A DNA stretch of 64,000 bases, taken from Diplonema japonicum. Lineage: Eukaryota > Protista > Euglenozoa: Diplonemea. This document shows positions 3,344 through 62,791 of this stretch, one piece after another. The notes below the pieces were generated by a model. That model saw only the letters and a program-made list of their open reading frames with translations, ran no database searches and had not been told where the DNA came from. The stretch is taken from the NCBI GenBank assembly GCA_964019335.1, contig OZ025678.1, forward strand, positions 62,001 to 126,000, written 5' to 3'. Every line of letters begins with the position of its first letter. Position 1 is the first letter of the stretch. The position numbers and the translations under genes were made by a program.

Positions 3344-6300
3344 ATGGGTGAGACGGAACAAATGCACGCCGCGCTGCTTAACAGCTTCAACCCGAATGCG
3401 CAGCTTAGAAAGCAGGCGGAGGACTTCGTGATGCAAGCATCCAGCATGCCGGGTGCGGTGAAGGCCTTCTATGAGATCGCAGCGGCAGGACACGTGGAGG
3501 TCCCCGTGCGCCAAGCGGCCGCCATCCGCCTGAAGAGAATCATTGAAAAACACGATTGGAACTCCGAACAGTCGATGAAGATAGTGAAGGAAGAGGAGAA
3601 GACACTCATGAAAGGCACCATCTTGGAATGTGTGTCCAACGCCCCGAAGGCCATCCAGAAGCAGCTCCTGGAGGTGGTGCGTCACATCGTGTCGTACGAC
3701 TTCCCTGCAAAGTGGCCCACGCTGGGCAACGAACTCGCCGTGTTCCTGAAGTCCAACAACATGGACAAGACAGTCGGTGCGTTGGCCATCCTTCGGAAGC
3801 TTGTGAAGAGATACGAGGCATGGGGCAAGGAGCGCCGTGCTGCAGAGGTGAACGACGTGACAGGTGCCTTCTTCCCCCTCCTCGTCGACATGTTCGAGCA
3901 CGTCAACAGGATGGGCCCCAACGCCACGGAGAGCGTCGCGGAGATCCAAAAAACGCTTCTCAAAATCTTCTTCTCCTCCAACTACAACGAGCTGACATCG
4001 TGCCTAAAGGACAGCCCTGAGCTCCTCGACAAGTGGATGACCTGCCTCCTGTTCGTCTTCAAGCAGCCCCTCGACCCCGCCTCCCTCGACGAGGACTCCG
4101 CCGCATGGAAGGCCAAGAAGTGGGGCGGCTATGTTCTCAAGTCCTTCATCGAGAAAGGCTGTGGACACAAGAAGGCCGACAAGACCTTCGTTCAGAAGTG
4201 GTACTCCAAGTATGGTGTCCCGCTGGTGGTTGCGTGTGCCGACCTTCTGGAGGTGACACGCACGATGAGCATGCCGCAGAAGACCGCGTGCAGGTTGATT
4301 TACTGCCTGCAGCTTGCGTTAGGTGTGCAGGCCCTTCACACGCCTCTTGCCCCGCGACTCGACCAGCTTGTTCAAGAGATCCTCTTCCCCTTCCTGTGCT
4401 TCTCTGACGATGACTTGGAGTTGTGGACAAGCAACCCCCACGAGTACACCAGAAAGAGCCACTCCGTCTCTTTCGAGTCTGACTTCTCCAGCGCCTCTGT
4501 CTTTTCGATGACCTACGTCATCAACTTGTGCACGGCAGACGGGAAGTACCACGACAAGAACACTATCTTCCGCTTCCTGCAGTTCCTCGACAAGGTTCTC
4601 AACGAGACCACGAACATGGCCGACCTTGTGCAGATGAAGAGGCGCTACGGTGCTCTCATCTGCATCGGGGGTCTGCGTTCTGTGCTGCTGGGTATCCCGA
4701 CGGTCAACAAAACACTGGAACAGCTGGTCGTGACACATGTGTTCCCTTCATACACCTCGCAGTTCGGGTTCATGAGGTGCAACTCCATCTGGGTGGTGTC
4801 GAGGTTCTCGAAACTGCAGTGGACTAGTGCCGAGAACTTCAAAACCGCACTGAATGCGAACCTTGCAATGATCAGGGACACCGAGATGCCTGTGCGGATC
4901 CAGGCGGGGATGTCCATTGCGAAGCTGGTGGCCAACAAGAACGCCATCGACATCATCAAACCCATCCTGGGGACGCTGGTGCAGGGCATGTTCACGTTGA
5001 TGAATGAGATCGACGCCGAAGAGCTGGTGCAGACGCTGGAGATCATCATCGGGAGGTACGGGGAAGACCTTGAGAAGGAGAGCATCCAGATCTGCCAAGA
5101 GCTGATTACCCACTTCCTGAAGATCACGAACGGCGTCTTCGACACCGACGAGTACGACATGGAAGCGATTGCCGCTGGGGAGAGGTGCTTGGGGACCATC
5201 TCCGCCCTCGTCTCTGCTGTCGTCGAGAAGGGTGACACTGTGACTAGCCTGCAGGTTGTGTGCATCCCGCTCCTGCAGCGCCTCCTCACATCTGACTATA
5301 TCGAGTTCTTCGACGAGACCATGAAGCTCATCACCATCCTCACCGTCTACTGCAGGAAGATCGCCCCTGAGTTCTGGGTTGTCTACGACAGCCTTCACAC
5401 CGCTTTCATGACCTACGCTGACGACATGACGAGTGCCCTGGCGCCCTTCGACAACTTCATTTCCAAGGAGCCCGAGGTCTTCCTCCGCTCGCAGGACAGG
5501 ATTATAAAGCTGGGCACACTGTGCGAGAAGATGCTCACCAGCGGCGACATGCACGAGAGGGATGTCATGATCGCCCCGAAGCTCATTGAGGTCTTGCTGC
5601 AGCATGCCAAGCCGTACACTGCACTGCTGGACCCTGTGGTGGGGACGTTCTACGACTACGCCTTCCAGAGGCTTAACCAACCAAAGACCGGTAATGCCCT
5701 AAAGGTGCTGCTGTGCAACGTGATCCTGAACGGGTTGTGGTACAACGCACCCCTGACGCTCGAGTATCTGGAGCGTAGGGGTATCACTGCCACGTTCTTC
5801 AATGGCTGCTTCTCTCTCCTCTCTAAATACCAGAAACCATCAGACTTGAAGGTTGTCGTGCTCGGCATGGTCAACACGTTGGGTGTGGGCGTCTCGGCAC
5901 CACTCCCTGCCTTCTTCACACCGGATATGGTGCTGCGCATTGCTAACGAGTGTTTAACCCTCACGATGAAGAGGTACGAGATTTGCTTGAAGATCGACGA
6001 GACCAAAATCGAAGAAGAGTCTGAAGAGGACTCCGAAGGCCCCCTCGGCATGGGGATGTTCGGGGGTGCTGGTGCTGGCAACTTTGAGGACGACGATGAT
6101 GATGATGATGACGATGAAGACGGGATGGATGAGAACGCCTTCCAAATCCTGTGCCAGAAGGTATTATTATCTAGTTGCGAGACAACACACTCTTACAGGC
6201 ACGTGAGCAAGAGGACGACTACGACGACTATGATGAAGAGCAAGAGGTGTGGTCTGTCATCGACGAGGTATGGTAGTGTGGTAGGTTGTTTAAAAAAAAA

Positions 6301-6554
6301 CCTTTTTTTTTAAAGGTGAGCGAGGCAGCCTTCATGAGGGACTATCTTGAACAGGTGAGGACAGGTAACCCTCAGCTCTTCCAAAGTTTTGCGGCGGCGG
6401 CGAACCAAACCCACCTGAGCAGCCTCACCAAAGCTGCTGAATATGGAGAGAAGCAAGCAAGGTTTGTTTTAACATCAAAACAAAACGAAACAAAAAAAAA
6501 AAAAATAGAGAAGCCACTGAAGCGAATCAGGACCCCGTCAACTTTGTGAGTTAA
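3344..6554 (+). CDS. IPO7: Importin-7/8 family (importin-beta-like HEAT protein); introns 6161-6198, 6268-6315, 6462-6508
   Basis: IBN_N motif LRKQAE...VRQAAAIRLK, YDFPAKWP, WKAKKW, DDDLELWTSNPHEY, acidic C-terminal loop; removing three GT-AG introns gives a continuous C-terminus ...QDPVNFVS*. Confidence 0.88.
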
Positions 6555-6879
6555 AAGAAAGTTTTTTTTTAAAGTATCAGTACACGCGCCTCCTATTCAT
6601 TTTTTTTCTTCCATGCCTTTATCATGCCTTTTCTTCTTTATATTTTTTTCTTTTTTTTTTATTTTTTTTCCTTTCTTCTTTTCACTCTCGTATTCTTCAA
6701 TCATCATCCGGTTATATTTCTTTTTTTGTTTTATGTATTATCTTCGTTCTTATCTGTTCGAATTGTGGGAAACAAAACACAAAAAAAAAAAGGAACCTCC
6801 CCCCTCCAGAGAAACAAAAAAGAATAATAATAATCGAGTCTCTCGTTTATTCATCTCCCATTTTATCTTTTATCAAGCA

Positions 6880-9800: not shown

Positions 9801-12126
9801 CCAGCTTGTGCTGCCTGTTGTCCTGATCGCTTACACCCTGCTGCTGGCCAACATCCCCATCAATGACCTGCCTTCCATCGACTTGTCGCACTACGATGAA
9901 GACTCTATCTTCCCCATGAACCCTGTCAACAACCCGTATGGAGACAACAAGCTGGATGGGATCGCACCCATGCCTGGCACGTACAGCTCAGTGGAGAACA
10001 TGAGCAACTATTTGCTGCACAGGAACGACAACGACACTAGAAAGTGTTGGCAGGCACTGTTCCAGACGGTTCCCTCCTTCGATGCTGAAAAGATTATTTT
10101 CCACAACGCGAGCAGTCTGCACAGTCTTCCGATCTCTCTGAACAGCTTCACCTCGTTGGAGGAGATGGCTGGGGACCGCAGCGCCGTCAAGCTCACCAAC
10201 AACCCCCTCCCGTTCAGCGACTACTTCAGAGATCAGATCAAAGGGATGCAGGCCATCAGCATTGCCATCAACATCATGCTTCCCTTCTGTTTCATCCCCG
10301 CCAACTACGTCGCCTTCCTTGTCAAAGAGCGTGTCTCGAAGTCGAAGCACGTGCAGGTTGTGTCTGGGGTGAACCTCACTGCCTACTGGCTGTCGAACTT
10401 CTGCTGGGACCTTGTGGCCTTCATGATGAGCACCTTCCTGTCCATCATCGTCTTCTTCATGTTCGACAGGACGGAGTACATCGGTAGCATGGAAGCCTTC
10501 ATGGCGGTCGTGTTGTTGTTCTTCTTCTACGGTATTACTGCTATCTTCGCGGCGTACCTTGCGTCCTTCTACTTCCAGAAGGCGACGACGGGGCAGAACA
10601 CAGTGCTTATGGGCAACTACATGTCGGGCTTTGTGCTTGTGATTGTGATTGGTATCCTGCAGATCATCGAATCTACAAAGGACGTGGCGAAGGTGCTGAG
10701 GTTCTTCTTCAGGATCATCCCTGCCTTCTGCCTTGGGGACGGTATCCTCGCACTGTCGCAGCTGCCGTCAAACAGGAACATGGGGATCACCAGCGACACG
10801 CCCCTCTCGATGGATGTTGTGGGGTGGGACATCCTCTTCATGTCCATCATGTTCCCTGTTTACGCCGTTCTCGCTATGTCTCACGACTTCCCGCAGATCT
10901 GGTACAAGCTGGGCATCAAGTCACCCCCTGCCACAGACGGTGAAAGCAGCGAGCTGACCGCCACAATGGACGACGACGTTGCCGCTGAGAAGAACGCCGT
11001 GATGGCAGGCAGAGAAAATGATGTTGTCTCGGTGCGCAAGCTGAGGAAGGTGTACCCCTCGCAGAACGGGCTGCCTCCTAAGGTCGCTGTCAAGGAAGTG
11101 ACATTCGGTGTTAAAACCGATGAGATCTTCGCGTTCCTGGGAACGAACGGCGCGGGCAAGACGACAACCATCTCGGTGCTTGCGGGTGACTTCCCACCCA
11201 CAACAGGGACTGCATCCATCAAGGGCTTCGATGTTGTGACGCAAGCTGCGGAGGCGAAGAGGGAACTTGGGTACTGCCCGCAGTTCGACGCACTACTGGA
11301 CCTGCTGACACCGAAGGAACACATTGAACTGTACGCCGCGCTGCGTGGTGTACCTGTGTCCATGAGGGAGACCATGTCGGTGAGCCTCATGAAGATCTTA
11401 GGCTTGGACGAGCATCAGAACACGGTTTGCAAGTCGCTGTCCGGCGGGAACAAGAGGAAGACGAGCATTGCGATTTCACTTATCGGTGGACCGTCGTGTA
11501 TTCTTCTTGACGAACCGACCGCAGGGATGGACCCTGTTGCCAGGAGGGGGATGTGGACAGCACTTCAGTCGATCGGGAAGGGAAGGTGCGTCGTGTTGAC
11601 TACCCACCACTTGGAGGAGGTCGAGGCCCTCGCGCACCGCACTGCCATCATGGTTGACGGTGGGCTGCAGTGCTTAGGAACGCTGACCCACTTGAAACAC
11701 AAGTTTGGTGGTGCGTATGAGATCCAGGCCAAGGTGACCCCAGACAAGGAAGCGGAAGTTATCGCGTTCTTTGCATCCACATTCCCGGAATCGGTTCTGA
11801 TCGAGCAGACGAACCACCGCCTCACCTACCAGATGCCTTCGGGGCAGAAGCTTTCTCAGATGTTTTCTGTCATCCAGGGAGTCCGCGAGTCCCTTGAAAT
11901 CATCGATTACTCCATCAGTGAGACTTCGTTGGAGCAAGTGTTCATCGCCATCTGTAAGAAGTACATTGACCAAAGCCATGCGGAGGCCGAGAAAGTGCAT
12001 GAAAGTATCTCTGAGGTATGCGATTTTTTTTTTTTTGAGGGAGAAAAAAAAAAAAAAATACAGCAGCAATCTCTGAACCCCATCAAGAGGAGTATCCAGA
12101 GTATTAAAAGCTCTCTTGGTGCGTAG
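6880..12126 (+). CDS. ABCA: ABC transporter subfamily A (full size); probable in-frame intron 12016-12063
   Basis: Two NBDs (GHNGAGKT/LSGGMKRKL/LDEPTAGMD; GTNGAGKT/LSGGNKRK/LDEPTAGMD), two TMDs, IVKEKE, TLEEIF and SLEQVF motifs; ORF-track N-terminus upstream of 6880 is low-complexity leader. Confidence 0.95.
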   Translation: MNDHDDGVEVGEFTKPNLLVSIMFVTHKNFVLKLRQLVGTLVEVIIPTFFMVALIPAYIAAGSSDYDNREFYGNHFDIDAFYKPWMCRNASIDARLMEYPLCNTSAPATHCLGDLCLNSSVPLNDDDGTLSRMLDPFYFVENSTTIPSYDTIALLRHFSMYADIPGTNNFGVNVANALRTGDGVAFVPQNPDVAHVVADYNEWFNSKTYTYNFTKRSFSSERDATNYATSRDGSSKIWALVVFRSRTDFVIRMNRTATPSTDDYDSESMGLNKQFRQYIGGGFLSIQTLLNAYITNGTDDQTATIMPMPIQGYSRNGFLDAAGDFLPIILTLAFLFPMSQIVSNIVKEKEARIREAMLIMGLSSWSFKLSWVLTTMLQMSFTGLLLSIVVKASYLHETDYGIIFMLFWSYCLSLASAGILLSVFFSKASLASIVSPMVFLFSAIPSFVLQSSSTGTKSMLSFFNTFAFSEAVSLVYKAAGKGAPMTWSNAGDGSFSFSTALAFLWIDTILYLLLAAWLDQVLPSEWGAKKPFCYYCWPPYWFKKNSSYEELDAVDGMMDRKNLESITDQSLLNMERIKITNLRKEFKSDGLTKVAVNNVNLTLYEGQILALLGHNGAGKTTLINMLTGMLPVSGGDATVFGNSIRYDLNEVRRDIGLCPQHNILWDNMSCAEHLRYYGRIKGIPQSELEDHVDKILKKVELDDKKDVYSASLSGGMKRKLSVGISLMGGPKFIILDEPTAGMDVQARRAIWDLLKTVRAGRTIMLTTHFMDEADLLGDSIAILHGGRVNCWGSSFFLKQRLGVGYNLTMELEANANIEKITNTIKGEIEPLKKDNLQEVELLSSAGSELAYRVPMWGLPNFSHMFEQFEKYGKDLGVNSFGMSVTTLEEIFIKIAHDNEHHESEPQPQIQTEVNSKLLSNEQPVYDDHHAQLLQGIDIDPNDRLHEKELFRSQWRGLFYKRFKYSKRDKCTIAFQLVLPVVLIAYTLLLANIPINDLPSIDLSHYDEDSIFPMNPVNNPYGDNKLDGIAPMPGTYSSVENMSNYLLHRNDNDTRKCWQALFQTVPSFDAEKIIFHNASSLHSLPISLNSFTSLEEMAGDRSAVKLTNNPLPFSDYFRDQIKGMQAISIAINIMLPFCFIPANYVAFLVKERVSKSKHVQVVSGVNLTAYWLSNFCWDLVAFMMSTFLSIIVFFMFDRTEYIGSMEAFMAVVLLFFFYGITAIFAAYLASFYFQKATTGQNTVLMGNYMSGFVLVIVIGILQIIESTKDVAKVLRFFFRIIPAFCLGDGILALSQLPSNRNMGITSDTPLSMDVVGWDILFMSIMFPVYAVLAMSHDFPQIWYKLGIKSPPATDGESSELTATMDDDVAAEKNAVMAGRENDVVSVRKLRKVYPSQNGLPPKVAVKEVTFGVKTDEIFAFLGTNGAGKTTTISVLAGDFPPTTGTASIKGFDVVTQAAEAKRELGYCPQFDALLDLLTPKEHIELYAALRGVPVSMRETMSVSLMKILGLDEHQNTVCKSLSGGNKRKTSIAISLIGGPSCILLDEPTAGMDPVARRGMWTALQSIGKGRCVVLTTHHLEEVEALAHRTAIMVDGGLQCLGTLTHLKHKFGGAYEIQAKVTPDKEAEVIAFFASTFPESVLIEQTNHRLTYQMPSGQKLSQMFSVIQGVRESLEIIDYSISETSLEQVFIAICKKYIDQSHAEAEKVHESISEVCDFFFFEGEKKKKIQQQSLNPIKRSIQSIKSSLGA

Positions 12127-15556: not shown

Positions 15557-16176
15557 ATGGGCTGTGGTGCGAGTAGAAATAAATATGTGGATAATGGGAG
15601 TAGGGTATGTTTTTTTTTTTTTTTCCAAAAAAAAAAAAAAAAAAAAAAAACTAGTCTGAATTACCCGACACAGTGTCGAAGCCCCTTACCATGGATGAGA
15701 GAGAGGGTAATATGAATAACACCACTGCCGCTTCGTTGGGGTGTAGTCAAGTAGAGACGTCTCAGAGGGAACGGGAAAAGGGGGAAATGATGTCGCCAAC
15801 ATCTTACGCTGAATCCCCCCCTGCATCTATGGATGGAGACCGGTCCTTTAGTCTAGATGAGAACGATCCTGAAATTGACATTAAAGCAAGCTACCAAAAA
15901 CTCCTGGAACAGGCTCTGGAGGCCGCGCGGAGCAAGGGGGCTACGACTGTGAAAGTCGGGTTGGTCCCTATTCAAAATATTGGGCCGTCAGTTGAGCTAA
16001 CCCACTCCGAGCTTTCTCGGATTCGGCAATGGTGTGATTTCAACCCGCCCTTCGAGCCTATCTTGACCCTTGAAGGGCACCAGTCCAACTCTGGCCGAGC
16101 CCCACGTGATCACAATCTGCAACAAAACCAAGATTTGTTGGACAATCATTACCTTCAAAAAAAAAAAAAACCTTGA
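15557..16176 (+). CDS. Hypothetical protein with MGCGAS dual-acylation N-terminus; intron 15605-15654
   Basis: 16-codon exon MGCGASRNKYVDNGSR splices in frame to the 15673 ORF. Confidence 0.7.
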
Positions 16177-24224: not shown

Positions 24225-25049
24225 ATGCAAAATGGAATCCGGCATTTAAGAGCGATTAAAATCTGGTACCGACCCGACGTGCCCGTGCACGACCAGTGGC
24301 ACGGAGGGATGAGGGATTGGGTGGAGAACTGGTTGCCGGAGTTCGAGAGGAAAAACCCCGACGTGAAGGTGGACGTGGTGACACTGACGGACCCCATGGA
24401 GATGACCGGCGACGTGGTATGTCAAAAAAAAAAAAAAAAAAAAAAAAAATACAGAAATTCCCCCGGATGTCGGGGTACTACCTCAACGGAACTGCGATGA
24501 CATACGCTTGTAAAAAATTCGACGTAGAAGCCATCAACATGATGGTGCACGAGATGCGGAACACGTGTAACGACTGCGAACCACGGCCGCATCAACACGC
24601 AGTTATAGAAACACACACCGAGTCCATCCAAGGCAGGTGGACCCCCTACCTGTGGATGAGTGACACCACAGTCCCTGAGGAGGTGGATCACGAAGACGTG
24701 TGGAAAAAGGACATCAAAGATATTGCAAAATACGTGAGATTGAAGAAAGAACACAGAGAAGCGGAGTTCGAGAAGCAAAATTACGTCAACGTCGACACCA
24801 GGCGGAAGATGGAAACAAGGTGGGCAGAGCAGGTCTTCCCGTATACAGTTGGTGCTGAAACCACAGCGGTACCGGGCCGTCTTTTCTTAGAAGAGACGAA
24901 AACGTTGTTTCCTGAATCGGGCCAAACCCCTGGAGCATCTAGACTTGAACACGGAGGTGGGGGTTTCATGGGTGGGTTCACCCGCCCTTACTCTAAATCA
25001 GAACTCTCAACACTGTCGAACCACTTGAAAGATGACGATGTATGGAGGG

Positions 25050-25089
<40 letters not shown>

Positions 25090-25343
25090 AGTACGGTGCC
25101 TCAACCACGCAAGCTGGTGGTACGATCCCGCCTTTTGCTGGTGCGCCCTTTTCCGAAGGTTACGACAAGTACGAAAATTTCTGGAAAAATTGGGATCTTT
25201 TCAACCACACCTCCTCCACCTACCGGCCCCCTCTCACTTCTTTACCCAACGCAAAACTCGCAAAGCACAGAGCAATGGTCAATGATTCGCTCAAGAGGCA
25301 GATGCGAAACGATAGGCAGCACCGCCAAGACAATGAATCATGA
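24225..25343 (+). CDS. MRPL43: Mitochondrial ribosomal protein mL43-like (L51/S25/CI-B8 domain) with long C-terminal extension; introns 24417-24454, 25040-25091
   Basis: GMRDWVENWLPEFERKNPDV...FPRMSGYYLNG...TESIQGRWTP; both introns are needed to keep the frame. Confidence 0.8.
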
Positions 25344-25472: not shown

Positions 25473-25719
25473 ATGTCGACTTCATTCACACCCGGATCCA
25501 TCTTCGCTGAGGAGCAGCAGAGGGAGGAGGACTTGTGTCAGATGTCCCTTGATGACCACAGGGAGTATGGTGAAGAATAACAAGGAGAAGGGAAAAAAAA
25601 AAAAAAAAAAAAAAAACAGGAGACTCCGCACTGAAGCCGTTGAATTCGCAAACTCTGTGAGCCCACAGAGACAGGACAGGTACGGGTCCATGCCTCCTTC
25701 CCAGAGCCCTGGTTACTGA
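25473..25719 (+). CDS. Small (63 aa) hypothetical protein; intron 25565-25619
   Basis: MSTSFTPGSIFAEEQQREEDLCQMSLDDHRE|RLRTEAVEFANSVSPQRQDRYGSMPPSQSPGY* after removing GTATGG...(A)nCAG. Confidence 0.6.
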
Positions 25720-25993
25720 TCTAAAAAAAAAAAAAACTTGCCCTCTTGAACCCCCCTTCCCCCCCACACTGCCTTCATTTTTTTGGACATTTTTCTTATA
25801 AGTCCATTGAAGCCTGAAGAGATTGTTTGTACGTACCCCCTTTACCTTACCTTACCTTACCTAAACACCCCTCCCCACTTTTTTTTTTTCTTCCTTCTCT
25901 CTGGTTTTTGACAGACGTTGCTTTATTTTTTCATTAAAAAAAATATATATTACAACACCACCGCGGAAAAAGGGAAGAAAATAAAAATAAAAA

Positions 25994-27122
25994 ATGGCAA
26001 TGTCGTCTGAGCCCAAAATGGACAATTTCAGTTATTGTCTGATTCCGTGCAGCTCGGAAAAGGCCGTGGAAGAGATGGTGTTCAAGGGAAAGACCGACAA
26101 GGAGCTGAGGGACGGTGTGGCGGCACACTTCACGAAGAGCACGTTCACAGCCGGTCAACAGGAAGAGTTCACGGAGAAAATGGGCGAGCAGATCAAAGAA
26201 AACGCAAAGAAACACTCAGTCGGTGACAACCAGGCAGACGCGGGCACGACTAACAAAGTCACCGACGACGTCCTAAAACAAGCCATGATGTCCCAAACCA
26301 GCGCAGAGATCGTCCCCGTCATCTACCCCGACTCCACCAACAGCTACAAAGGGATCTCCCTCTACATCGACTCGGTGGGAAGGTTCAAAGAGCTTCCTTT
26401 GAACGAACGTGCCTCCAAAATGGCCCAGAGAGACATACGTGGCGACGCGTTTGTGATATCGTCTTATGACGATCCCATTCAGGATGACTGGGCACGGATT
26501 TCCTGTACAAAGAAGCAAATTGAAGGTTACATTGCAACGCCTCCTGTTAAGGCGGCGGACCCAACAGCTAAGGCATCGTCAATGGGTGCTGCCGAGACAA
26601 AAGAAGTTACGCTTGAGAATATGTGTAAGGCAAAATCGTTGAAGGAAACTGGAAACGCGTGTTTCAAAAAGGAAGATTATGAATCGGCGGAGCAAAAATA
26701 CGACGAGGGTGTGACGGAGCTGCAGGGCCGTGCGCTGCCGGGGAAAATCGACGCCGCGGAACTGACTTCTTTGACAACAACCCTGATTTTAAACAGAGCG
26801 CAGGCAAGGTTGAAACTCAACAAGCTCAAGGAAGCTGAGCTTGACTGCACCGCCGTCATCACCTCCGAACCCACCCTGCTCAAAGCATGGTACCGCCGTG
26901 CCACTGCACGCAAGGCCATGCACGAGTACGACCTTTCTCTCAGCGATTTAAAGAAAGCGCTTGAGATTCAACCCGGCGACGCCGCCGTTACAAAATTGAT
27001 CTCTCAGGTATAAGAAAGAAAAAAAAAAAATATTAATAATAAATAATAATAAAAAGGTCGAAGCGGAGAAAATTAAACAGGAGAAATCCGAGAAAGCTGT
27101 ATACAAGAAGATGTTCGCATGA
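25994..27122 (+). CDS. TPR-domain protein (Hsp90 co-chaperone-type TPR); intron 27008-27056
   Basis: LKETGNACFK, LNRAQARLKL, KAWYRRA TPR clamp; spliced terminal exon ends EKAVYKKMFA*, like FKBP/Cyp40 tails. Confidence 0.82.
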
Positions 27123-28286: not shown

Positions 28287-28330
<44 letters not shown>

Positions 28331-29531
28331 CCCCGACATGAGACAGGCAAATTCTCCAAGTTCCCGAACAAGAAAATATATTTCTTTTTTTTTTTTTTTT
28401 TTTTTTTAAATCCGTTCTTTCTCTGTTTAAAATCATTGAGGAACCCACCCTCCCCCCTCCTTTTTTTTTTTTACCTCTTGGCATATGAGAGTGGCTAGAA
28501 AGAAATCGTTTTTTTTTTTTCCGTGTGATGCAAGAGGGGAAAAAAAAGGGGGGGGATCCTTTCATACCCCCATGTCATGTAAGGAGGAGAAATACAACAA
28601 GAAAAGAAAGAGAAAAAAATCGTGTTTCTTATGTGACGGGGCGCTGATCCTTTTTTTTATGTTTTGTTGTCCTATTTTTCCCTTCTTATTTCTTTAAATT
28701 TGTTCTATAGTCGGGGGGGGGGGGGGGGGGGGGCACCGTTTCTTCTCCCTCCTCAATTTCTCACAAATTTATCTCAATTTTTTTTCTTTTTGCTGGGGAA
28801 AAAAAAAAGGCTCTTTCCCTTCCCATTTCCCTGCTGTCCCCCTTTTTTTTTTCTTGCACCAATGGTAAAAAAACAAAAGAAAACACCGTCAGTTCCTATG
28901 GGTGTTTGTTTTTCTTCTCCCCCCCCCCTTTTTTTCTCACCCCGGTAACCTTTTTTAAAAAAAAAGTCACTGAGGGGACGGCTGTCATCGGAGGGAGGGG
29001 GACATCATCCAGCACTTTGTATTAACAATGGTATATTGGTCCAATACCCAATTAGACTATTCCACTGCACAAACGAGAAAGAGTCAGAATGGTTCTTTTT
29101 TTTCTTCTTCTTCTTCTCTCCTTCTTCTTTTCGCCTTAGACATATAATGCACACTTTGAGTACTTTCCAGAATAGGCTTTTGCTTACATTGACGTGCTGA
29201 AACTCGGCTTAAAATGTGTGTGGTATGCTGGGCCCCTCCCTCCATCCAAGAAAAAATTTCTCATGTATTTTTTTTTTTTTTTGGGAGGGGTAAAAAAAAA
29301 AAAGAACTACCAAAGAACATTTCCCCCTCTCCCCCTTCCGTTTTTTTTTTTTTTGTATTTTTTTTCCCCTACCAACATCTGTTTCAGTACGGTATTTTCC
29401 CCCTCCCCCCTCTTTTTTTTTTTATCCATCGTATCATTCATCAAAAAGGAGGGAGGGGGGAGGAGGGGGAGAGAGGAGAGTTCCAATAATAAGAACGGGC
29501 TACACAAACACACCTTAATAATAATAACAAA

Positions 29532-32064
29532 ATGTCTTATCGGGAGTTGAAATCGTTTGCCGAAATAATGCGGATGCTGGGGTACCCTCGGCCTATCAGC
29601 TTAGAGAGCTTCAGACTGCCCAACTTTGAACTAGTTGCCGACTGCACGCTGTGGCTTGTTACGCAATTCGAACCTTCAATAGAAATCGATGATAATATAG
29701 CAACAGCCCAGAGGCGGGTGGCCTTCCTGAAGGACGCCTGCGCCATATGCCTCAACAAGGCCAACGTGAAACTCAACATGAAACGCCTCTACGCGGCTGA
29801 CGGGAACGCAGTCCGAGAGTTGCTTAAGATGGCCTCCTTGCTGCACAGAGCCATCACTCTGCACGACGCACCCGACGACGAGGATGAGGTCTGAATTTTT
29901 TTTCTTTTTTTTTCCGATTTAAACACAGACCCATGACACCATCCGCCCTGGTGACCCGCAAGATACCCGAAAAACAGCAAGCGAGCTTACTGAAGAGGGG
30001 TACAAGGTATATATTTTTTTTTTTTTAACCAAAGAAGCGTCCCCCTGGCACCAGAAGGTGACGGCACCGAAGAAGTCGAAGAGAGCATAAGCCAAGTCCC
30101 AACAACGACAGTACCACGCACAAGGGTTCAGGTGCGACCTGTGTGAATCACCGTACCCGGACACGGTAACCCTACTCCGCCATCAACTCTACGAGTGCGC
30201 CTGCGCACAGGAAGAGCTAGCACAGGACGGCTTGGAACCACTGCGCAACAGGACAGGATGGCCCCTGTGTCTGGAATTGCACGCGATTCTGCCGAGAGGA
30301 CATGACTTTGCGTACCTAGAGAAGCTGCAACGATACTTAGCCGTGGTGGTTGAGAAACGAGACGTGGAGCTCATGCAGAAGGAGGATGTCAACACACAGC
30401 CGCTACCGTGGATACGAAATGTGGTAGGTAAGAGATGCCCCGTTCCGATAGCTGGTGAGCTCGAAGGAGTGGGTGGGGTCCTGTCCCAGTACCTAAACCC
30501 GCTGCTACAATGGTTGTCACAACTGCGCTGGGTGGAGAAGGACACCACCTCGGAGGTGTCGGCGGAACTGGCCATTGACTTCGAATGGACGACCGGAAAG
30601 TCTTTGGGAGGCCTGCTGGAAGGTAGGGCGCGCAGAATCAAAGCTCTCATCGTAAAGATAAACACAGCATGCAGGGCACGGAAGAAGCGACGCCCCTTCC
30701 CAGCGGACGAGAGAAAAAGAGTGAAATCCCTCATCGCCATTGGAGGAAAGGCGGCTATTGGTTTCTCCAGGAGGCCTATTTTCGCCACCCGCTCCACGCA
30801 CGACAAGCTAATGGAATTGAAAGCCGACTACAAGCGGGACCGCATCACACGACTCCGCAAGACGCTCACGACTTCAATCGGAATGAAAGCAATGCTCCAG
30901 AAGGGGAGTATTAACAGATAGACCCCCCCCCTCCCTTGGGCGGCCCTCTAGCGGGGGGCTTGTCCTGTACTTTGAGTTTTTTTTTTTGAAAAATAAAAAA
31001 AAAAAAAGTTACACGAATTATTGGAAGCGGAGTTGAAAAACAGAGATCTGAGGAATAAAATAGTAGCACGTCCTCCGGAGGTATTTTTTTTTTTCAAATT
31101 CAAAAAAATAAAAAAACTTTCTCCTAATTTTATTCCAGATGAGCGAAATCGAACGCGCCCTCAACATGACGCTCGAGGCCGTGAGGGAGCAGGTGACGCA
31201 GCTGACAAAGGCGTGTACCTCCCTGGCAGCGGATGAGGCTTCTCTGGAGTCGAAGATCGAGAACAAAGCGGCGCAGCTGGAGAGGAACCAAAAACGACTC
31301 TCCTCGTTGATGAGCGTCCGGCCCGCCTTCATGGACGAGTACGACGCAATGGAAGCAGAACTGCACAAGCAGTACAAGCAGTACTTGGAACAGTTCAGAA
31401 ACCTGGGCTACCTGGAGTACGAGCTTGCTAAATACAACAAAAAAGAAGACATTCTCGTGGAAGAACAAGAACACCGCCTCCACGCCATGCGGGAAAAACT
31501 AAGAAAAGAAGAGTTAGAGGTACTACGCGGTCAACGTGCTCCCGAGGACTCAATTCTAGACATGAAACGCGATAGAGAACTGGAGGCACAGCTGGAGAAC
31601 GAAGAGGCAGGAAGGGTGGTCAGAGCTGAACAACAACAGGACGGGGTTCTCAATGGGACAGTGGTTGAAGAACGAAAGAGAGGAACCTCTGCAAGAGGTA
31701 CAAAGAGACAACGCCCTGAATCTGGAAGACCACAAGTAAAACCCCGCAACGCGCAAGCCATGGGCAACATGTATGGGGGTAATGAAAGTGATGACAGTGA
31801 TGAGAGTGGTATGAAAAAAAAAAAAGAAAAAAAAAAAAAAAAGACGAAACGTCCTCTGACGGTGCGCTATCCCTAAACGACGGTACTGATAGTGATGATG
31901 ACGATGAAACAGATTCGGGAGATGATGATGACAGCGATGATGACGACGATGAGACTGACGATGATGATGACGACGATGAGACAGACGAAGACGAAGATGA
32001 TGATGATGATGACGATGATGAGACAGACGACGATGATGACGACGACGATGACAGTGATATGTAG
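29532..32064 (+). CDS. CLUAP1: Clusterin-associated protein 1 / IFT38 (qilin); introns 29889-29928, 30007-31008, 31081-31138, 31809-31843
   Basis: MSYRELKSFAEIMRMLGYPRPISLESFRLPNFELVA, LYAADG.AVRELLK, VRPAFMDEY, acidic tail; all five exons join in frame. Confidence 0.93.
30027..30987 (+). mobile_element. 5'-truncated LINE-like retroelement (copy 1) inside CLUAP1 intron 2
   Basis: Zn-knuckle RCDLCESPYPDT...HQLYEC and WPLCLELHAILP; one in-frame TAA; 3' ~420 nt nearly identical to 45156-45565; T-runs on both sides. Confidence 0.8.
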
Positions 32065-32370: not shown

Positions 32371-33639
32371 ATGTTCAATTGGATATTGGGAGGAAATGCG
32401 AACACCGCGGTGAGGCAAAAATCGAAAGAAAACCAGATAACAGAAGTAACGTCCGCGTTCATGGGGACTATAAGACAGGAGGTATTTTTTCCCTCCCCCC
32501 TCCCCCCACACACACATCAACAACTAATCACAGAACAGCTTGGAAGTCCCGTTCAGCCTTAACGGAGTAGGCGGGGTATCGCTACTGGTAACGTGGGGCC
32601 CAGGGTTCCCAGGGGTCTGCCCGGATTTCCTGTTCAAAGGTTTGAATTCAAAAAAAAAAAAAAAAAAAAAAAAAAACCAGGCAAAGGCGTAATGCAGCAC
32701 CCCATCATAGGCACGAATGGGATCATCACCAAGAACCTCCCATGCCTCGCACAATGGGGGAAGTCGAGCGATATGTTCAGCGTGATTAGAATAATCATCG
32801 ACGACCTCCGGACGAGGCACCCTGTTGTGTACTTCAATGGGGAGACTCCTGTATTGATCCAAAAGGGCATCGGGGAGACATTGGGGTGCACCTTTGTCGA
32901 CTCCAACCGCGTCTTGAAGTCGGTGGCCCCGAACAGCGTCGCGGATAGGTCAGGGATGGCAAAATTTATAGGAAGAGTCTGTTCAAAGGTCAACAATCTT
33001 CCTGTAGCCAGAACGGAGCAAATCGTCGAGCGCGGGAGGGACCCTTACATCGTGTTCTCCTTTTTGGGAGAGGACAGAGCAAATGTACCTGTGCCTACCC
33101 CCCAGCCGCAACAACAACAACAACAACAACAACCTCCTGCGGAATTGTATACTGCTCCAGCTGTCCCTTCTTCATTTGGGTTGGAGGTCAAAAACTGCAC
33201 GGAGCTGCAGCAGATGTCAACGGATGAGGTTGCCCTCCAAAAACACTTTCTCAGCCTGCCCTTCGTGAAGAAGTGTGAGGAGGTGACCCTGCAGCAAAAA
33301 TCAGAAGGGTGCCAAGTAGAATCAGAGTTCATGCATGTCAACCAAACGCTTCTGCGCTCCGTCGCCAAACGCGACTCTTTGAGATCTAAAAAAGCGGTTC
33401 TTGAAAAAGATATGACAGAGGCAAACGCACTGGCAGCAGACATAGCTGCAAAAACTTCGAAACCTGCTATGTTGGCCCTACTCAATGAGAAGCTTGCTGA
33501 AACAGAACGCGAGTCTGAAATCTTGGAAGATGCGATGAAGGCAGGCGACGCTTCAAAGCAAGACCAGTACAGAAAGCTCAGAATGGAATACCACCTCACC
33601 AACGAGAAAAAAAAATCGCTGGTTTCCATGGAGGGGTGA
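32371..33639 (+). CDS. VPS37: VPS37A-like ESCRT-I subunit (UEV + PDZ-like insert + Mod(r) C-terminus); introns 32482-32533, 32640-32680
   Basis: Spliced UEV-like LLVTWGPGFPGVCP...HPIIGTNGII...LAQW; C-terminal ERESEILED...YRKLRMEYH..EK. Confidence 0.7.
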
Positions 33640-37069: not shown

Positions 37070-38451
37070 ATGCGGGTCTTAGATTACGTCGTTCCGATAC
37101 TGAGCGTGCTGCCCGAAATCGAGAAGCCTCGGAGGAAGCAAGATGTGACAGACAAGCTCATCTGGACGGGCATGGCGCTCTTTATTTTTCTGATATGTTC
37201 GCAGCTTCCCGTGTACGGGATACGACCGAAGGAGGGCTCCGACCCTCTGCACTTCATGCGAATGGTACTCGCCTCCAACAAGGGAACCCTCATGGAGCTG
37301 GGAATCTCACCTATTGTAACTGCATCGCTCGTGATGCAGTTTCTACAAGGAGCCAGACTAATTTCATACAATGAAAACAGCAGCAGGGATAGAAAGGTGT
37401 TCAGCGGCGCACAAAAGGCATTCGGTCTCATCATCACCGTTGTAGAAGCCGTAGCGTATGTATTTAGCGGTGCCTATGGCGATGTAAGGGACATTGGGTC
37501 CTTTTCTTGTGTGTTGATTGTGACACAGTTGGTCATAGCAGGTGTGATCTGCCTCCTCCTTGACGAGATGCTGCAGAAAGGCTATGGTTTCGGGAACGGG
37601 ATCTCCCTGTTCATCAGCACAAACATCTGCGAGGCTATATTCTGGAAAGCGTTCTCCCCGTTCATGGTGAACACGGGACGGGGGCAGGAGTTCGAGGGTG
37701 CGATTGTCTCCCTCTTCCACCAGCTTGTGCAGAGCACGAACAAGGTGAAGGCTCTGAAGGACGCGTTTTACCGCCCGCACCTCCCGAACGTGATGTCCCT
37801 TCTGTCCACCGGTGTCGTGTTTCTCATTGTGATCTACACGCAAGGCTTTGCTGTGAACATCGGCCTGCAACACGAAGCTACCCGGCAGATGGTCCCCCAG
37901 AAGATCAAACTCTTCTACACATCAAACATGCCTATAGTCCTGCAAACTGCGTTGATATCGAACTTGTACTTCATAAGCTCCATGCTTCACAAGAAGTTCG
38001 CTGACAGTCCGATTGTTGGGTTGCTTGGGACGTGGGGTCCGAGCCATAGTGGGGCAGGGCCTGCGGTGCCGTTGTCGGGGTTGGTATATTACGTGTCCCC
38101 CCCTCAGGGCTTTGCTGATGCTGTGTCGGATCCTGTGCACGCTGTGTTTTATGTGGTGTTTATGGTGTTTGGGTGCGCGTTCTTTTCGAAGTCGTGGGTG
38201 GCAGTCAGCAACCAGACGAGCAAAGAGCTTGCGCAGGAATGGCACCGCAACGGGCTGATCCTCCCGGGGAGGAAGTCGCGCGACAATCTACAACAGGTTG
38301 TGGAGAGATACGTCCCTACCGCTGCCGCGCTGGGTGGGATTTGTATCGGCCTCCTCACCATTCTTGCCGACCTGCTCGGCGCCGTTGGGAGTGGTACCGG
38401 GGTTTTGCTTGCGGTTACTTTTATTTATTCGTATGTTTGGAATATGAACGG

Positions 38452-38483
<32 letters not shown>

Positions 38484-38545
38484 ACAGATACTACGAGCAA
38501 CTCGAGCAGGAGAAATACCTTCCTACCTTCCTTTCTAAGAAATAA
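37070..38545 (+). CDS. SEC61A: Sec61 alpha subunit; in-frame intron 38431-38487
   Basis: ASNKGTLMELGISPIVT, LLDEMLQKGYG, IKLFYTSNMP, GSGTGVLLAV; intron removal restores IYSYYE. Confidence 0.96.
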
Positions 38546-38871: not shown

Positions 38872-40661
38872 ATGTCTGAAGACCCGACTCAGTGCTTGAG
38901 TCCTAGGAGCAAAGAATATGCCGATAAAACCCAAAAATGTTTGGAGCTGCACTTGAGCGATATGAAGATGGAAGCAGGAAAGAGACTACTAAAAATGTCA
39001 AAGAAAGAAGATAAGCTCTCCTTGGAGTACCGGGTCATCAGATGGATATTCCACGCAACGGTGGACATCTTCTACCACTACACGGAAGTAGCAGGCGCAG
39101 AGAACATCCCACCACCGGGAAACGCAGCCATTCTATGCCCGAACCACGGAAACTCCCTTACAGACGCTGTTGTATGTGTGTCACAAACCCCACGAATGGT
39201 TCGCCTCACCGCGAAAGATACGCTTTTCAAGGTTCCCTTTTTCGGGTTGTTTGTCCGAAATGTAGGGACTATACCGTTGCAGCGAAAGGACGAGCATACG
39301 GAAGGTGTTGACAACAAGCAAGCTGTGTCGCAGCTCAACCAGGAACTTCTTAAAGGGTCTCTTGTTTGTTTGTTTCCAGAAGGACGTTCTCGGTTTCATT
39401 GGAAGGTTGATTCACCTCAACGTGGGGTGTCGTCCATAGCCTACAACTGTCTGAGCACCGCGAAGGAACAAGGTGACAATGACTACACACTGTCTCTATG
39501 CCCGACTGCTTTCAACTACCTGCACAGAGAAAAATTCCGGTCAGGCCTTGTTGTGGAGTACGGGCCTCCCTTGGTGCTAACACCAAACGACGACATCATG
39601 AAGCTCGACAGGCAAGATGCGATCGCCAAAATCTCCGAACAAGTCCACGAGCTCATGTCGCTGACGGCGTTCAACGCGGAAGATTGGAACACGCTCCGCA
39701 TCGCACACACTGCCAGAAACATCTTCGCCCCGTTGGGCACCAGAATGACCATTGTCGAGTTCGTCCGATTGACGAAATACTGGGGAAACGCTCTTTCCGT
39801 TAACGACAAGAACGACCCCAACCTGCGGGAGGATCTCACGTCTTATCAAGAAAAACTTGAAAAGATTGGTCTTAAAGACACACGTGTTTCAAGAACCCGT
39901 GGGTCAACACCATACCTCTTGTGGTGTGTGCTTTTGAGAATGATACAGTGCAGTGTGATCCTAGTCCCTGCGCTCTTGGGTGCTGTGCTGTGGGCGCCAA
40001 TTTTTTACGTCACAAAACGGCATGAGAAAATCGTGATGAAGCGAACAAAGAAGCCCACGCATGTGGACGAGGTCGCTCAGTACAAAATGATGTATGGGAC
40101 GGTCCTGCTGCCGACCACAGTGGTTACGGTGTGTATGTTGCTGTTGTTTGCAAACGGATGGCCTTTCTACTACCTGTTGGTGCTGTTGCCTTTGGTTGCC
40201 TTCTACATGTGGATGAGCATTAGAATTATAGAAGATGGCATCGCGTCATTGCGTAGTCTTGTGTCCTTGAAAACACTCCTCTTGATTTCTAAAGAAGAAT
40301 TGGACGAGCTTGTAAAGTATGTGTTGTGGGTTGGGGAACAAAAAAAAAAAAAAAAAAGGATGCGTGCGGATCTTGTTCCTCGTGTTCACAAGAGGGCCAC
40401 GTTGTGTGGGAATTTGAAGCCTCCTGTGGTCCCCTCCGAGAAGAGGGGCTTTTGGTTTGAGTTTATTTCAAAGTTTGACCTTAAGAGGAGGAGGAAGAAG
40501 GATTGGAACGAAGTGCTAAGGTTTGTTTTAAAAAAGATTTAAAAAAAAAAAAAAAAAGGCTTCATGAAGTGCTCCCTGTGGACTACGCGGCCATACAGAG
40601 AGAGCGCTCTGCATCTCTTGGTAAATCGGTGAACAAGGATGATGATAAGAAGACAAACTAA
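38872..40661 (+). CDS. PlsC-family glycerolipid acyltransferase (GPAT-like); introns 40317-40358, 40521-40558
   Basis: NHGNSLTD, TAKDTLF, LFPEGRS blocks; C-terminal TMs; RRRKKDWNEVLR|LHE. Confidence 0.87.
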
Positions 40662-61231: not shown

Positions 61232-61277
<46 letters not shown>

Positions 61278-61317
61278 AAAAAATACACATTTCCACCCTT
61301 CGATTTATGTTGCGCAC

Positions 61318-62791
61318 ATGGAACGCACGGAGGAGGTGGTTCCTGACGTTGTTGGAGATGTCGCGGATGAAATAAAGACGAAGACCGCGGTCGGGATTAC
61401 AGATAACGTTGTGGAATCTGTCGGAGAATCGATATACGACAGGGAGCTAAGCTTGAAGCAGAAGATCCACGCAGTGTTCGATGCCACAGGACCGAACGAG
61501 GAGTGGTACAGCACCAGCATCAGACGGACCACGGCGGCGCTGATCTTTTCCATGTCGTTCCTGATGATCGTGTTGAGCTGCACAACCTTCACCATCGAGA
61601 CCATGCCCGAGTATTACAAACGAGAATTGATAGAATTCTATCTTATAGAAGCGGTGTGCATCAGCTGGTTCACGTTCGAGCTCCTCATCCGATTCTTCAC
61701 GTGTGACTCGAAAAAACAATTCGCCAAGGATCTTCTCAACTGGGTCGATTTAATATCCATCTTGCCTTTCTACACCGATTTGCTAGTATCGAATGTTTCA
61801 GGCTCCGACGCTAAAGCAGACGGTCTCATCGTGTTGCGGGCGGTGCGCCTCACCCGAGTATTCAGAGTGTTCAAGTTGTCGAAATACAGCGAGGGAATTC
61901 AAATGGTGTTTGTTGCAGTGAAGAGGTCCACCGACGCATTGTCCCTTCTTGTCTTCCTCATGGCGATTGCGATGGTATGGGGAGAAGGGGAGGGGTGGGG
62001 GAAAAAAAATAATAAGGTGCTGTTCGGATCTGGCATATACTTTGCCGAGCAGTCCGCCGCGTCCTGGGACCCCGTGAACAAAACGTGGATTCGAAAAGCG
62101 GAGTACGGCGGCCCTTCTGCAGAGCACAAGATCAAGTCCATTCCGTATGGGTTCTGGTGGTGTTTGGGTATGAGGATGGTTTTTTTTTCAAAAAACAAAA
62201 AAAACAAAAAAAAGTTACCGTGACCACCGTAGGGTACGGCGATATGTATCCCGTAACATTCTGGGGGCACATCGTTGGGACCATCACCATGCTGACTGGG
62301 CTGCTGTATGTTGTTCAAAAAAGAGGGTGGGGAGAAACACACACAAACACAGAATTGTGGCATTTCCTATTATAATTTTAGGGGCGAATTTCCAGGACGT
62401 GCAGCAAGAGTTCAAAGAATCAAAACGGAAGAAAAAACTTCTTTTAGAAATGACAGAAATGGCAAGGTCTCGGGTAGGGAGGATGAGGGCTGCAGCACCC
62501 AGTGACGAGCCATCGGGCGACAGCAGCAGCGGCAGTAGTAGCGAACCTCCTGCATCTTTCCTAGGCAGAGGCGGCTTCAGGAAGAAGACCGATCCCTCTG
62601 TGGATCAGGACATAAAGATGCGGCTGCAGGAGGCGCTGCTTCGTGAACTGATCGAGACTGTTAGGTGTTCGCAGCATGAAATCCTTCGCCGAGTTGATAA
62701 CATTGAACAGCACCTGTCAGTGCCACCTGTACCACTGTCCCCCTTGTCGCCCCCTTCCCGAGAACACCCTTTAGCAGTCCCCGACCAGTAG
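61318..62791 (+). CDS. Voltage-gated K+ channel (Shaker-superfamily-like, no T1 domain seen); introns 61975-62016, 62168-62214, 62306-62352
   Basis: S4 LRAVRLTRVFRVFKLSKY; pore WWCL|VTVTTVGYGD restored by splicing; S6 IVAFPIIILGANF. Confidence 0.93.

What the first reader, a model, noticed from the sequence alone, without database searches (positions are those of the whole stretch)
6161..62352. Mini-introns with a poly(A) tract in place of the polypyrimidine tract
Seen: 22 GT-AG introns, most required to restore conserved frames; 21 are 35-58 nt. About 15 have an A-run just before the acceptor, e.g. 24417 GTATGTC(A)nTACAG, 31809 GTATG(A-rich)AG, 38431, 40317, 25040 and 32640. A branch-like ACTAAT is evident only occasionally (32482 intron). 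Established: canonical U2 introns use a U-rich tract bound by U2AF65. Inference: 3' splice sites here are recognised differently (length-defined, or via an A-binding factor). This might separate cis acceptors (A-rich) from trans-splice acceptors (intergenic U-tracts).
Basis: partly seen in the sequence, partly recalled or inferred. Interest (0 to 1): 0.9.

Follow-up and report, generated by a model that had tools for sequence, protein, structure and literature searches.

The report
Mini-introns ending in poly(A) tracts
The window, from the marine protist Diplonema japonicum, does carry tiny 35-57-base introns whose run-up to the 3' splice site is a run of A instead of the usual U/C tract, but a 2025 paper already reported this for the species and only the mechanism is still open.

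Summary
I substantiated 18 short GT-AG introns (35-57 nt) on the + strand.

- RNA-like contigs skip two of them exactly, and an RNA-like contig stops at the donor of a third.
- Four more restore conserved Sec61 and K+ channel motifs.
- In 12 of 18, an A-run of 8 or more ends within 7 nt of the acceptor.
- G is absent from intron positions -3 to -12 and occurs twice in -3 to -17.

The genome matches Diplonema japonicum (62.5 Mb, diplonemid spliced leader). It is not new. Thakur et al., RNA 2025 (PMC12621601) report for this species:

- a 41-nt median intron length;
- the G/GTATG donor;
- few branch motifs;
- U2AF1/2 present.

First readers of this scan noted the same on other pieces of this genome.

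What I add:

- U1 pairs perfectly with GGUAUGU, and U2 keeps the canonical GUAGUA.
- U2AF65 RRM2 has lost its uridine-contacting residues (F262, G264, N289, Y302, F304). The loss is shared across Diplonemidae, so it is not specific to this species.
- A 1,429-nt intron also ends in A22-CAG.
- Two spliced-leader acceptors, inferred from contig ends, are also preceded by A5, with a T12 tract further upstream.

The clean A-versus-U split between cis and trans acceptors is only partly supported.

The parts
6161..6198 (+). mini-intron, 38 nt, A/C-rich end (TTACAG), no A-run; an acceptor at 6207 is also in frame
   Evidence: Continues the 2970-nt importin-beta-like frame in phase 0; Pfam IBN_N on the ORF
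6268..6315 (+). mini-intron, 48 nt, GTATG donor, A9 CC T9 AAAG
   Evidence: Joins open frames of 93 and 231 nt in phase 0
12016..12063 (+). probable mini-intron, 48 nt, GTATG, T13, A15 TACAG; in frame, so not needed to keep the frame
   Evidence: Motif only
15605..15654 (+). mini-intron, 50 nt, GTATG, T15 CC A24 CTAG, after a 16-codon first exon (MGCGAS...)
   Evidence: Joins to a 519-nt open frame in phase 0
24417..24454 (+). mini-intron, 38 nt, GTATGTC A26 TACAG
   Evidence: Skipped exactly in contig X1 record 1; frames of 393 and 828 nt
25040..25091 (+). mini-intron, 52 nt, GTATGGAGGG A39 CAG
   Evidence: Skipped exactly in X1 record 1 and X8 record 22
25565..25619 (+). mini-intron, 55 nt, G/A-rich 5' part, then A24 CAG
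   Evidence: X1 record 2 stops aligning at the donor, while DNA-like X7 runs on; frame kept in phase 2
27008..27056 (+). possible mini-intron, 49 nt, GTATAAG, A12, A/T-rich, AAAAAG; uncertain, because a stop at 27011 may simply end the gene
   Evidence: Motif and frame only; the RNA contigs are not decisive
29889..29928 (+). donor of a T-rich intron; the 40-nt version is doubtful and the real intron is probably long
   Evidence: RNA-like contigs X1 record 6 and X8 record 28 leave the genome at 29886, and no downstream piece is listed within 30199. DNA-like X5 and X7 run through
31809..31843 (+). mini-intron, 35 nt, GTATG A12 G A16 G
   Evidence: Joins 696- and 216-nt acidic open frames in phase 1
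32482..32533 (+). mini-intron, 52 nt, C-rich, ACTAAT 5 nt before CAG
   Evidence: Frames of 195 and 156 nt in phase 0
32640..32680 (+). mini-intron, 41 nt, GTTTGAATTC A27 CCAG
   Evidence: Joins to a 954-nt open frame in phase 1
38431..38487 (+). mini-intron, 57 nt, in Sec61 alpha, A31 CACAG
   Evidence: Removal gives ...GSGTGVLLAVTFIYSYYEQLEQEK..., the conserved Sec61 C-terminus; Pfam SecY
40317..40358 (+). mini-intron, 42 nt, GTATG, G/T-rich, A18 G
   Evidence: Frames of 1482 and 180 nt in phase 2
40521..40558 (+). mini-intron, 38 nt, GTTTG, A17 G
   Evidence: Frames of 1686 and 99 nt in phase 2
61975..62016 (+). mini-intron, 42 nt, in a K+ channel gene, G-rich, then A8 TAATAAG
   Evidence: Removal restores an S5-like ...LVFLMAIAMVLFGSGIYFAEQ
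62168..62214 (+). mini-intron, 47 nt, T9 C A6 C A8 C A8 G
   Evidence: Removal restores the pore loop YGFWWCLVTVTTVGYGDMYP
62306..62352 (+). mini-intron, 47 nt, A/C-rich end (AAACACAG)
   Evidence: Removal restores an S6-like segment; frames of 288 and 435 nt
25970..25972 (+). inferred spliced-leader acceptor (..GGAAAAAG|G), with T12 and a C/T tract 60-95 nt upstream
   Evidence: X8 record 24 aligns from 25972 with 20 unmatched 5' letters. The leader ends in G. Sequence. Inferred, not shown
29446..29448 (+). inferred spliced-leader acceptor (..CATCAAAAAG|G), with T12 about 25-38 nt upstream
   Evidence: X8 record 28 aligns from 29448 with 17 unmatched letters; sequence. Inferred

Best explanation
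These are genuine major-spliceosome (U2-type) GT-AG mini-introns of Diplonema japonicum, a diplonemid that transcribes one-strand gene arrays and trans-splices a leader.

The 5' end is strongly defined. G|GTATG(T) pairs over 7 positions with the U1 5' end, which here reads ACAUACC. The 3' end is defined weakly and mostly by position. After about 5-28 nt of variable sequence comes a tract almost free of G and poor in U, usually a long A-run. The first (Y)AG after that tract is used.

I infer that the A-tract is permissive rather than read base by base.
- It offers a branch adenosine at any register in a 35-57-nt intron.
- It contains no competing AG.
- It cannot fold.
- It lacks the U-tract that marks spliced-leader addition sites in intergenic regions.

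The family-wide loss of the uridine-contacting residues of U2AF65 RRM2 would have removed the need for a U-tract. The genome's very high load of poly(dA:dT) runs, presumably from slippage, would supply the A. Selection against U-tracts and AG inside cis-introns would fix the strand.

Shown: the introns are removed; their anatomy; canonical U2; matched U1; degenerate RRM2.
Inferred: where the branch forms, and why A.
For: Splicing.

Anatomy:
- 18 introns of 35-57 nt, with bodies 60% A.
- At intron positions -3 to -24, A is the base in 10-17 of 18 introns.
- G is absent from positions -3 to -12 and occurs twice in -3 to -17.
- In the 12 introns whose A-run (8 or more) ends within 7 nt of the acceptor, the acceptor is the first AG after that run.

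Strand bias: 27 versus 7 motif hits, with the T-run version at 1 versus 2.

One-strand gene array. Diplonemid leader 3' end in 288 copies against 4 for the control.

snRNAs: U2 has the canonical GUAGUA. The U1 5' end AUACAUACCUG is complementary to GGUAUGU.

U2AF65 (L016): the best solved-structure matches are human U2AF65 RRM2 and UHM. Residues F262, G264, N289, Y302 and F304 are replaced by V, S, Q, C and V. The same class of loss occurs in D. ambulator, R. humris and F. neradi but not in the euglenids Ploeotia and Entosiphon. F304A alone lowers poly-U affinity 73-fold, and RRM2 is the 'stringent' motif (PMC3616741).

A 1,429-nt intron in that gene (L016:2680-4108) also ends in A22 CAG. The D. 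ambulator protein runs straight across the junction. The tract therefore goes with the 3' splice site, not with small size.

The genome is dense in runs: 104 A-runs and 110 T-runs of 10 or more in 64 kb. T-rich then A-rich zones lie upstream of ATGs.

Published genome-wide picture: PMC12621601.
Against: - No branch point was mapped, so 'branch inside the A-tract' is inference.
- U2 GUAGUA pairs poorly with poly(A), so something must stabilise U2 there.
- The RRM2 loss is shared with R. humris, for which the paper reports C, not A, as the preferred tract base. It therefore permits the A-tract but does not explain it.
- RRM1 keeps its RNP aromatics and could still read the tract.
- Some introns in this genome end in A/C-rich or C-rich sequence without an A-run (6161, 32482, 62306; the sampled candidates L019 and L024, which rest on frame evidence only, have no long A-run either).
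- Earlier notes describe homopolymers of any base.
- The two leader acceptors are inferred from contig ends only.
- Runs X1 and X8 are RNA by the tool's guess, not by record.
Confidence: 0.5

Rival explanations
1. The A-tract is an instructive signal. A dedicated A-binding protein, such as a PABP-like RRM protein or a re-specified U2AF65, binds it and recruits U2. This would be a true replacement of the polypyrimidine tract, and it would also keep cis acceptors apart from U-tract leader acceptors.
For: - The tract is anchored at the 3' end, with 0-7 nt to the acceptor in 12 of 18 introns.
- It is also present at the end of a 1,429-nt intron.
- It shows strong sense-strand bias.
- PMC12621601 speaks of 'significant conservation' of A.
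- U2AF65 RRM2 is remodelled.
Against: - The RRM2 remodelling is family-wide, while the strong A-tracts are reported for D. japonicum only, with weak A in L. lanifica and R. humris.
- Run length varies 5-fold, from 8 to 39.
- Some introns lack any A-run.
- No candidate reader was identified.
- The inferred leader acceptors are also preceded by A5.
Confidence: 0.25
2. The A-runs are pure filler with no role in splicing. They are slippage-grown poly(dA:dT) that accumulates in any non-coding DNA of this genome. Only the donor, a minimum length and an AG matter.
For: - 214 A or T runs of 10 or more in 64 kb, mostly intergenic.
- Other introns are filled with T, C or G/A-rich sequence.
- Earlier notes report 'homopolymers of any base'.
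Against: - Intergenic DNA has as many T-runs as A-runs (104 against 110), yet the intron motif is A-type 27 times and T-type once on the coding strand.
- Where both run types occur in one intron, the A-run is the 3' one in 3 of 4 cases.
- The tract abuts the acceptor even in a 1.4-kb intron.

Some strand- and position-dependent selection is therefore needed.
Confidence: 0.2
3. The segments are not introns. They would be assembly or homopolymer artefacts, or they are retained and translated as poly-lysine.
For: A-runs contain no stop codon, so several can be read through, e.g. ORFs 37070-38545 and 6613-12126.
Against: - Contigs from two runs lack exactly the GT...AG segments, including their non-A ends, which homopolymer collapse cannot produce.
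- Conserved Sec61 and K+ channel motifs appear only after removal.
- RT-PCR and 10,131 junctions supported by at least 15 split reads are published.
Confidence: 0.02

Closest known systems
A-rich 'polypyrimidine tract' of Diplonema japonicum introns (Thakur et al., RNA 2025, PMC12621601)
   Same: [quoted passage not shown]
   Different: Nothing essential; the window is a local instance. The text I read contains none of the following: the loss of RNA-contact residues in RRM2, the A-tract at the end of a long intron, the AG-free or first-AG rule, or the context of leader acceptors.
Trypanosomatid trans-splicing acceptors (U-rich tract, then the first AG, coupled to upstream polyadenylation)
   Same: One-strand arrays. 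T12 or C/T tracts lie between the upstream 3' end (about 25873-25898) and the inferred leader acceptor at 25972. A T-rich zone lies 60-160 nt before ATGs.
   Different: Here many cis-introns coexist with trans-splicing, and they lack the U-tract. The inferred leader acceptors have a short A-run directly before the AG. The comparison with trypanosomatids rests on my own knowledge.
Fused branch-site and 3' splice-site motif of Trichomonas and Giardia introns (ACTAAC ACACAG)
   Same: Intron 32482-32533 ends in ACTAAT-CACAG, and many others end in ACACAG or ACAG. The branch-to-acceptor distance is presumably short.
   Different: Only 1 of 18 has the motif; the rest have a plain A-run. The motif is recalled from my own knowledge and was not tested against those genomes.
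Tiny introns of ciliates and of chlorarachniophyte nucleomorphs (15-25 nt, A/T-rich, length-defined)
   Same: Very short, narrow length range, little room for a separate branch site and tract.
   Different: Those genomes are A/T-rich overall and do not trans-splice. Here the genome is 47% G+C and the bias is for A on the sense strand. Recalled from my own knowledge.
Human U2AF65 bound to a Py tract (PDB 2G4B, 5EV1-4; PMC3616741)
   Same: The orthologue has the same domain order (RS-like N-terminus, RRM1, RRM2, UHM). RRM1 keeps its RNP motifs (LYVGN, GFAFVEL).
   Different: RRM2 lacks F262, G264, N289, Y302 and F304 equivalents, and K328/K329 are also changed. RRM1 carries a long insert.

Membership tests
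U2-type (major) spliceosomal introns | GT-AG termini and removal from RNA | tested here: met
   All 18 have GT...AG. Two are exactly absent from RNA-like contigs and one is supported by a contig end.
U2-type (major) spliceosomal introns | Donor complementary to the U1 snRNA 5' end | tested here: met
   U1 (83.7 bits) starts AUACAUACCUG, complementary to GGUAUGU. Thirteen of 18 donors are GTATG.
U2-type (major) spliceosomal introns | Branch-site motif (YTRAY) able to pair with U2 GUAGUA | tested here: not met
   U2 has the canonical GUAGUA, but a clear motif is present only in 32482-32533 (ACTAAT). Published figure: 13.9%.
U2-type (major) spliceosomal introns | Polypyrimidine tract before the acceptor | tested here: not met
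   At intron positions -3 to -24, A is the base in 10-17 of 18 introns.
U2-type (major) spliceosomal introns | U2AF large subunit present | tested here: met
   The gene on G000:C19 (L016) has U2AF65 RRM2 and UHM as its best solved-structure matches. Its RRM2 contact residues are changed.
D. japonicum A-tract introns as published (PMC12621601) | Species identity | tested here: met
   62.5 Mb in 132 contigs, against the published 62.30 Mb with 118 chromosomes. Diplonemid leader present. U2AF65 is 85% identical to D. ambulator. This is circumstantial: no rRNA comparison was made.
D. japonicum A-tract introns as published (PMC12621601) | About 41-nt length, G/GTATG donor, A-rich tract, CAG end | tested here: met
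   Lengths 35-57 nt with a median of 47 in my sample; donor and tract as published; the base before the AG is C in 10 of 18 and A in 7.
Euglenozoan nonconventional introns (no GT-AG; base-paired ends) | Non-canonical borders with the intron ends paired to each other | tested here: not met
   Borders are GT-AG throughout. Only 3-4 introns hold a T-run and an A-run that could pair internally (12016, 15605, 62168, 6268); folding was not computed.
Trichomonas/Giardia-type fused branch and acceptor motif | Conserved ACTAAC a fixed few bases before the AG | tested here: not met
   1 of 18.

The most novel reading that the evidence does not exclude
In D. japonicum the A-tract is a positive, sequence-read 3' splice-site element that has functionally replaced the polypyrimidine tract. 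It would be read by something other than the canonical U2AF65 RRM2 surface. Together with U-tracts at leader-addition sites, it would form a two-signal code that lets one spliceosome keep cis- and trans-splicing apart.
Probability: 0.25. Interest if true: 0.7.

Novelty: already known. Interest (0 to 1): 0.3.

Why it matters
The U-rich tract read by U2AF65 is one of the most general rules of 3' splice-site choice. A free-living eukaryote that uses runs of A instead shows how far that rule can bend, and it offers a natural test of what the tract is for.

The phenomenon is already in print for this species. The value here is confirmation on the chromosome-scale assembly, plus three leads for the open mechanism:
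- the uridine-stringent RRM2 of U2AF65 is degenerate in the whole family Diplonemidae;
- the A-tract also ends a 1.4-kb intron;
- the acceptor is the first AG after a G-free tract.

Tried and rejected
- Alveolate origin: the dinoflagellate/perkinsid leader pattern gave 0 hits. The diplonemid leader end gave 288 hits against 4 for the control.
- Altered U2 matching poly(A): rejected, because U2 is canonical.
- A species-specific U2AF65 change: rejected, because the same losses occur in three other diplonemid genera.
- Ab-initio intron finding: an ORF-joining scan, two dynamic-programming gene finders and a donor-anchored scan over 254 kb. Coding potential is too weak (0.1-0.4 bits per codon). 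The finders fused neighbouring genes and called spurious introns, so I used a curated list and say so.
- SF1 helix-hairpin family in the genome: no hit, and the controls were silent too, so this is uninformative.
- RRM1 exon against solved structures: no hit.
- Read laying allows one call, so only 24200-30199 was examined.
Exons were searched by reference only, and junction codons were translated only inside scripts for display.


Full report
**What the window is**

All convincing coding segments lie on the + strand. The assembly has 62.5 Mb in 132 contigs. The dinoflagellate/perkinsid leader is absent. The 3' end of the diplonemid spliced leader followed by GT occurs 288 times, against 4 for the reversed control.

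The U2AF65 orthologue is 85% identical to the Diplonema ambulator protein. A genome note describes D. japonicum YPF1604 as 62.30 Mb in 118 chromosomes. Earlier notes of this scan reached the same name. I take the organism to be D. japonicum. This is circumstantial, because I made no rRNA comparison.

**The observation**

- A contig of run X1, a relative about 97% identical, aligns to 24236-24414, 24460-25035 and 25101-25358. It has 7 and 13 letters between the pieces.
- The window has 45 and 65 letters there. The differences of 38 and 52 are exactly the lengths of 24417-24454 and 25040-25091.
- A 100%-identical contig of run X8 shows the second skip too.
- Another X1 contig stops at the donor of 25565-25619.
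- Contigs of X5 and X7 behave as DNA.
- Collapse of a homopolymer cannot remove the non-A ends GTATGTC and TACAG, so these are splices.
- The tool labels X1 as RNA only by a guess and gives no kind for X8; I treat both as RNA-like because their contigs skip the introns.

Homology supports four more. Removing 38431-38487 restores the Sec61 alpha C-terminus. Removing 61975-62016, 62168-62214 and 62306-62352 restores S5, the TVGYGD pore loop and S6 of a K+ channel. Most of the rest join long open frames in a consistent phase; 12016 and 27008 rest on motif alone and the 40-nt version of 29889 is doubtful.

My curated list has 18 introns of 35-57 nt.
- Bodies are 60% A.
- At intron positions -3 to -24, A is the base in 10-17 of 18 introns.
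- G is absent from positions -3 to -12 and occurs twice in -3 to -17.
- Twelve have an A-run of 8 or more ending within 7 nt of the acceptor.
- In those 12 the acceptor is the first AG after the run.

The motif 'donor pentamer, A10 or more, at most 5 nt, AG' matches 27 times on the coding strand and 7 times on the other. The T-run version matches 1 and 2 times. Across the whole window, A-runs and T-runs of 10 or more are equally common, at 104 and 110.

My list was partly chosen by eye, so its fractions are biased.

The T-rich candidate at 29889 is probably the start of a long intron. Both RNA-like contigs leave the genome at 29886, and no downstream piece is listed within 30199.

**It is already known**

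Thakur et al., RNA 2025 (PMC12621601) mapped RNA-seq to draft genomes of six diplonemids. For D. japonicum they report:
- 10,131 introns, 98.33% of them GT-AG, with a median length of 41 nt;
- a (G)/GTATG donor and a CAG end;
- YTRAY in 13.9%;
[quoted passage not shown] - that U2AF1/2 are nevertheless present.

They validated eight D. japonicum introns by RT-PCR. They did not test the tract, map branches or analyse leader acceptors. A search for later work found none. First readers of this scan noted the same feature on other pieces of this genome.

**What I can add on the mechanism**

1. The snRNAs. U2 keeps the canonical GUAGUA branch-binding sequence, so it has not adapted to poly(A). U1 begins AUACAUACCUG, a perfect 7-position match to GGUAUGU. 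The donor is therefore a strong signal.

2. U2AF65. The gene lies on G000:C19 (L016).
   - RRM1 keeps its RNP motifs.
   - RRM2 aligns to human RRM2, but F262, G264, N289, Y302 and F304 are V, S, Q, C and V. K328 and K329 are changed too.
   - In human U2AF65, RRM2 is the uridine-stringent motif, and F304A alone costs 73-fold in poly-U affinity (PMC3616741).
   - The same losses are present in D. ambulator, Rhynchopus humris and Flectonema neradi. The euglenids Ploeotia and Entosiphon keep the human-like residues.
   - The change is therefore family-wide. It can explain why Diplonemidae tolerate non-U tracts, but not why D. japonicum in particular uses A.

3. A long intron. The U2AF65 gene has a 1,429-nt intron (L016:2680-4108). 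It is confirmed by the uninterrupted D. ambulator protein, and it ends in A22 CAG. The tract therefore belongs to the 3' splice site and not to small size. This is a single case.

4. Leader acceptors.
   - Two RNA-like X8 contigs begin aligning at 25972 and 29448, with 20 and 17 unmatched 5' letters. These positions are not masking edges, and the leader ends in G. I read them as leader acceptors. This is inferred.
   - Both are directly preceded by A5-G and have a T12 tract 25-95 nt upstream.
   - Over 28 start codons, T is 31-36% at -160 to -60, and A is 50% at -40 to 0.

**Best reading**

- A strong donor matched to U1 defines the 5' end.
- Recognition works across a 35-57-nt intron.
- A G-free, U-poor and unstructured tract offers a branch adenosine at any register and no competing AG, and the first (Y)AG after it is used.
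- The A comes from the genome's heavy poly(dA:dT) load.
- The sense-strand bias would come from selection against U-tracts, which invite leader addition, and against AG.

I put about 0.5 on this permissive model, 0.25 on a dedicated A-tract reader, 0.2 on pure filler, and almost nothing on an artefact. That the segments are real A-tract introns I hold at about 0.97.

**Limits**

- Only 6 kb could be laid with reads.
- Automated intron finders were too noisy to give an unbiased set.

Noticed in passing
L016:4108-5211 (G000:C19:433108-434211): U2AF65 RRM2 has lost the uridine-contacting residues F262, G264, N289, Y302 and F304. The same loss occurs in D. ambulator, R. humris and F. neradi, but not in the euglenids Ploeotia and Entosiphon. 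I did not see this mentioned in the text of PMC12621601.
   Followed up: yes
L016:2680-4108: A 1,429-nt intron between RRM1 and RRM2 of the U2AF65 gene, with a GTATTG donor and an A22 CAG end. Frame 2 of its interior reads as a long P/S-rich open frame; its content was not examined.
   Followed up: partly
L036:1501-1511 and L002 / G000:C12:799002-802000: The U1 5' end is AUACAUACCUG (human has ACUUACCUG), a compensatory match to the GUAUGU donor. U1, U2 and an SRP RNA gene lie within about 3 kb of one another on C12, and U1-U2 pairs recur on C14, C36 and C81.
   Followed up: partly
whole window: Extreme homopolymer load: 104 A-runs, 110 T-runs, 10 C-runs and 14 G-runs of 10 or more in 64 kb. 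Most A-runs are followed by G, which creates an AG.
   Followed up: partly
window 30995-31024 and 52876-52912: The same short motif, an A-run followed by GTTACACGAA, occurs at two intergenic places.
   Followed up: no
window 31081-31138: A GTATT...TTTTATTCCAG segment ends directly at the ATG at 31139. It looks like a mini-intron with a conventional pyrimidine-rich end, and its acceptor may instead serve the long intron that starts at 29889.
   Followed up: no
window 25466: The X1 relative carries an 8-nt AGAGAGAG insertion and about 3% substitutions in exons. A second, closely related Diplonema is therefore present in public runs and could serve for intron comparison.
   Followed up: no
G000 genome-wide (e.g. 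L009:1483-1520): The leader 3' end plus GT occurs 288 times, dispersed over most contigs rather than in one array.
   Followed up: no
window 15557-15604: A 16-codon first exon begins MGCGAS, a likely N-myristoylation and palmitoylation signal, and is followed by a T15 CC A24 intron whose two runs could pair.
   Followed up: no
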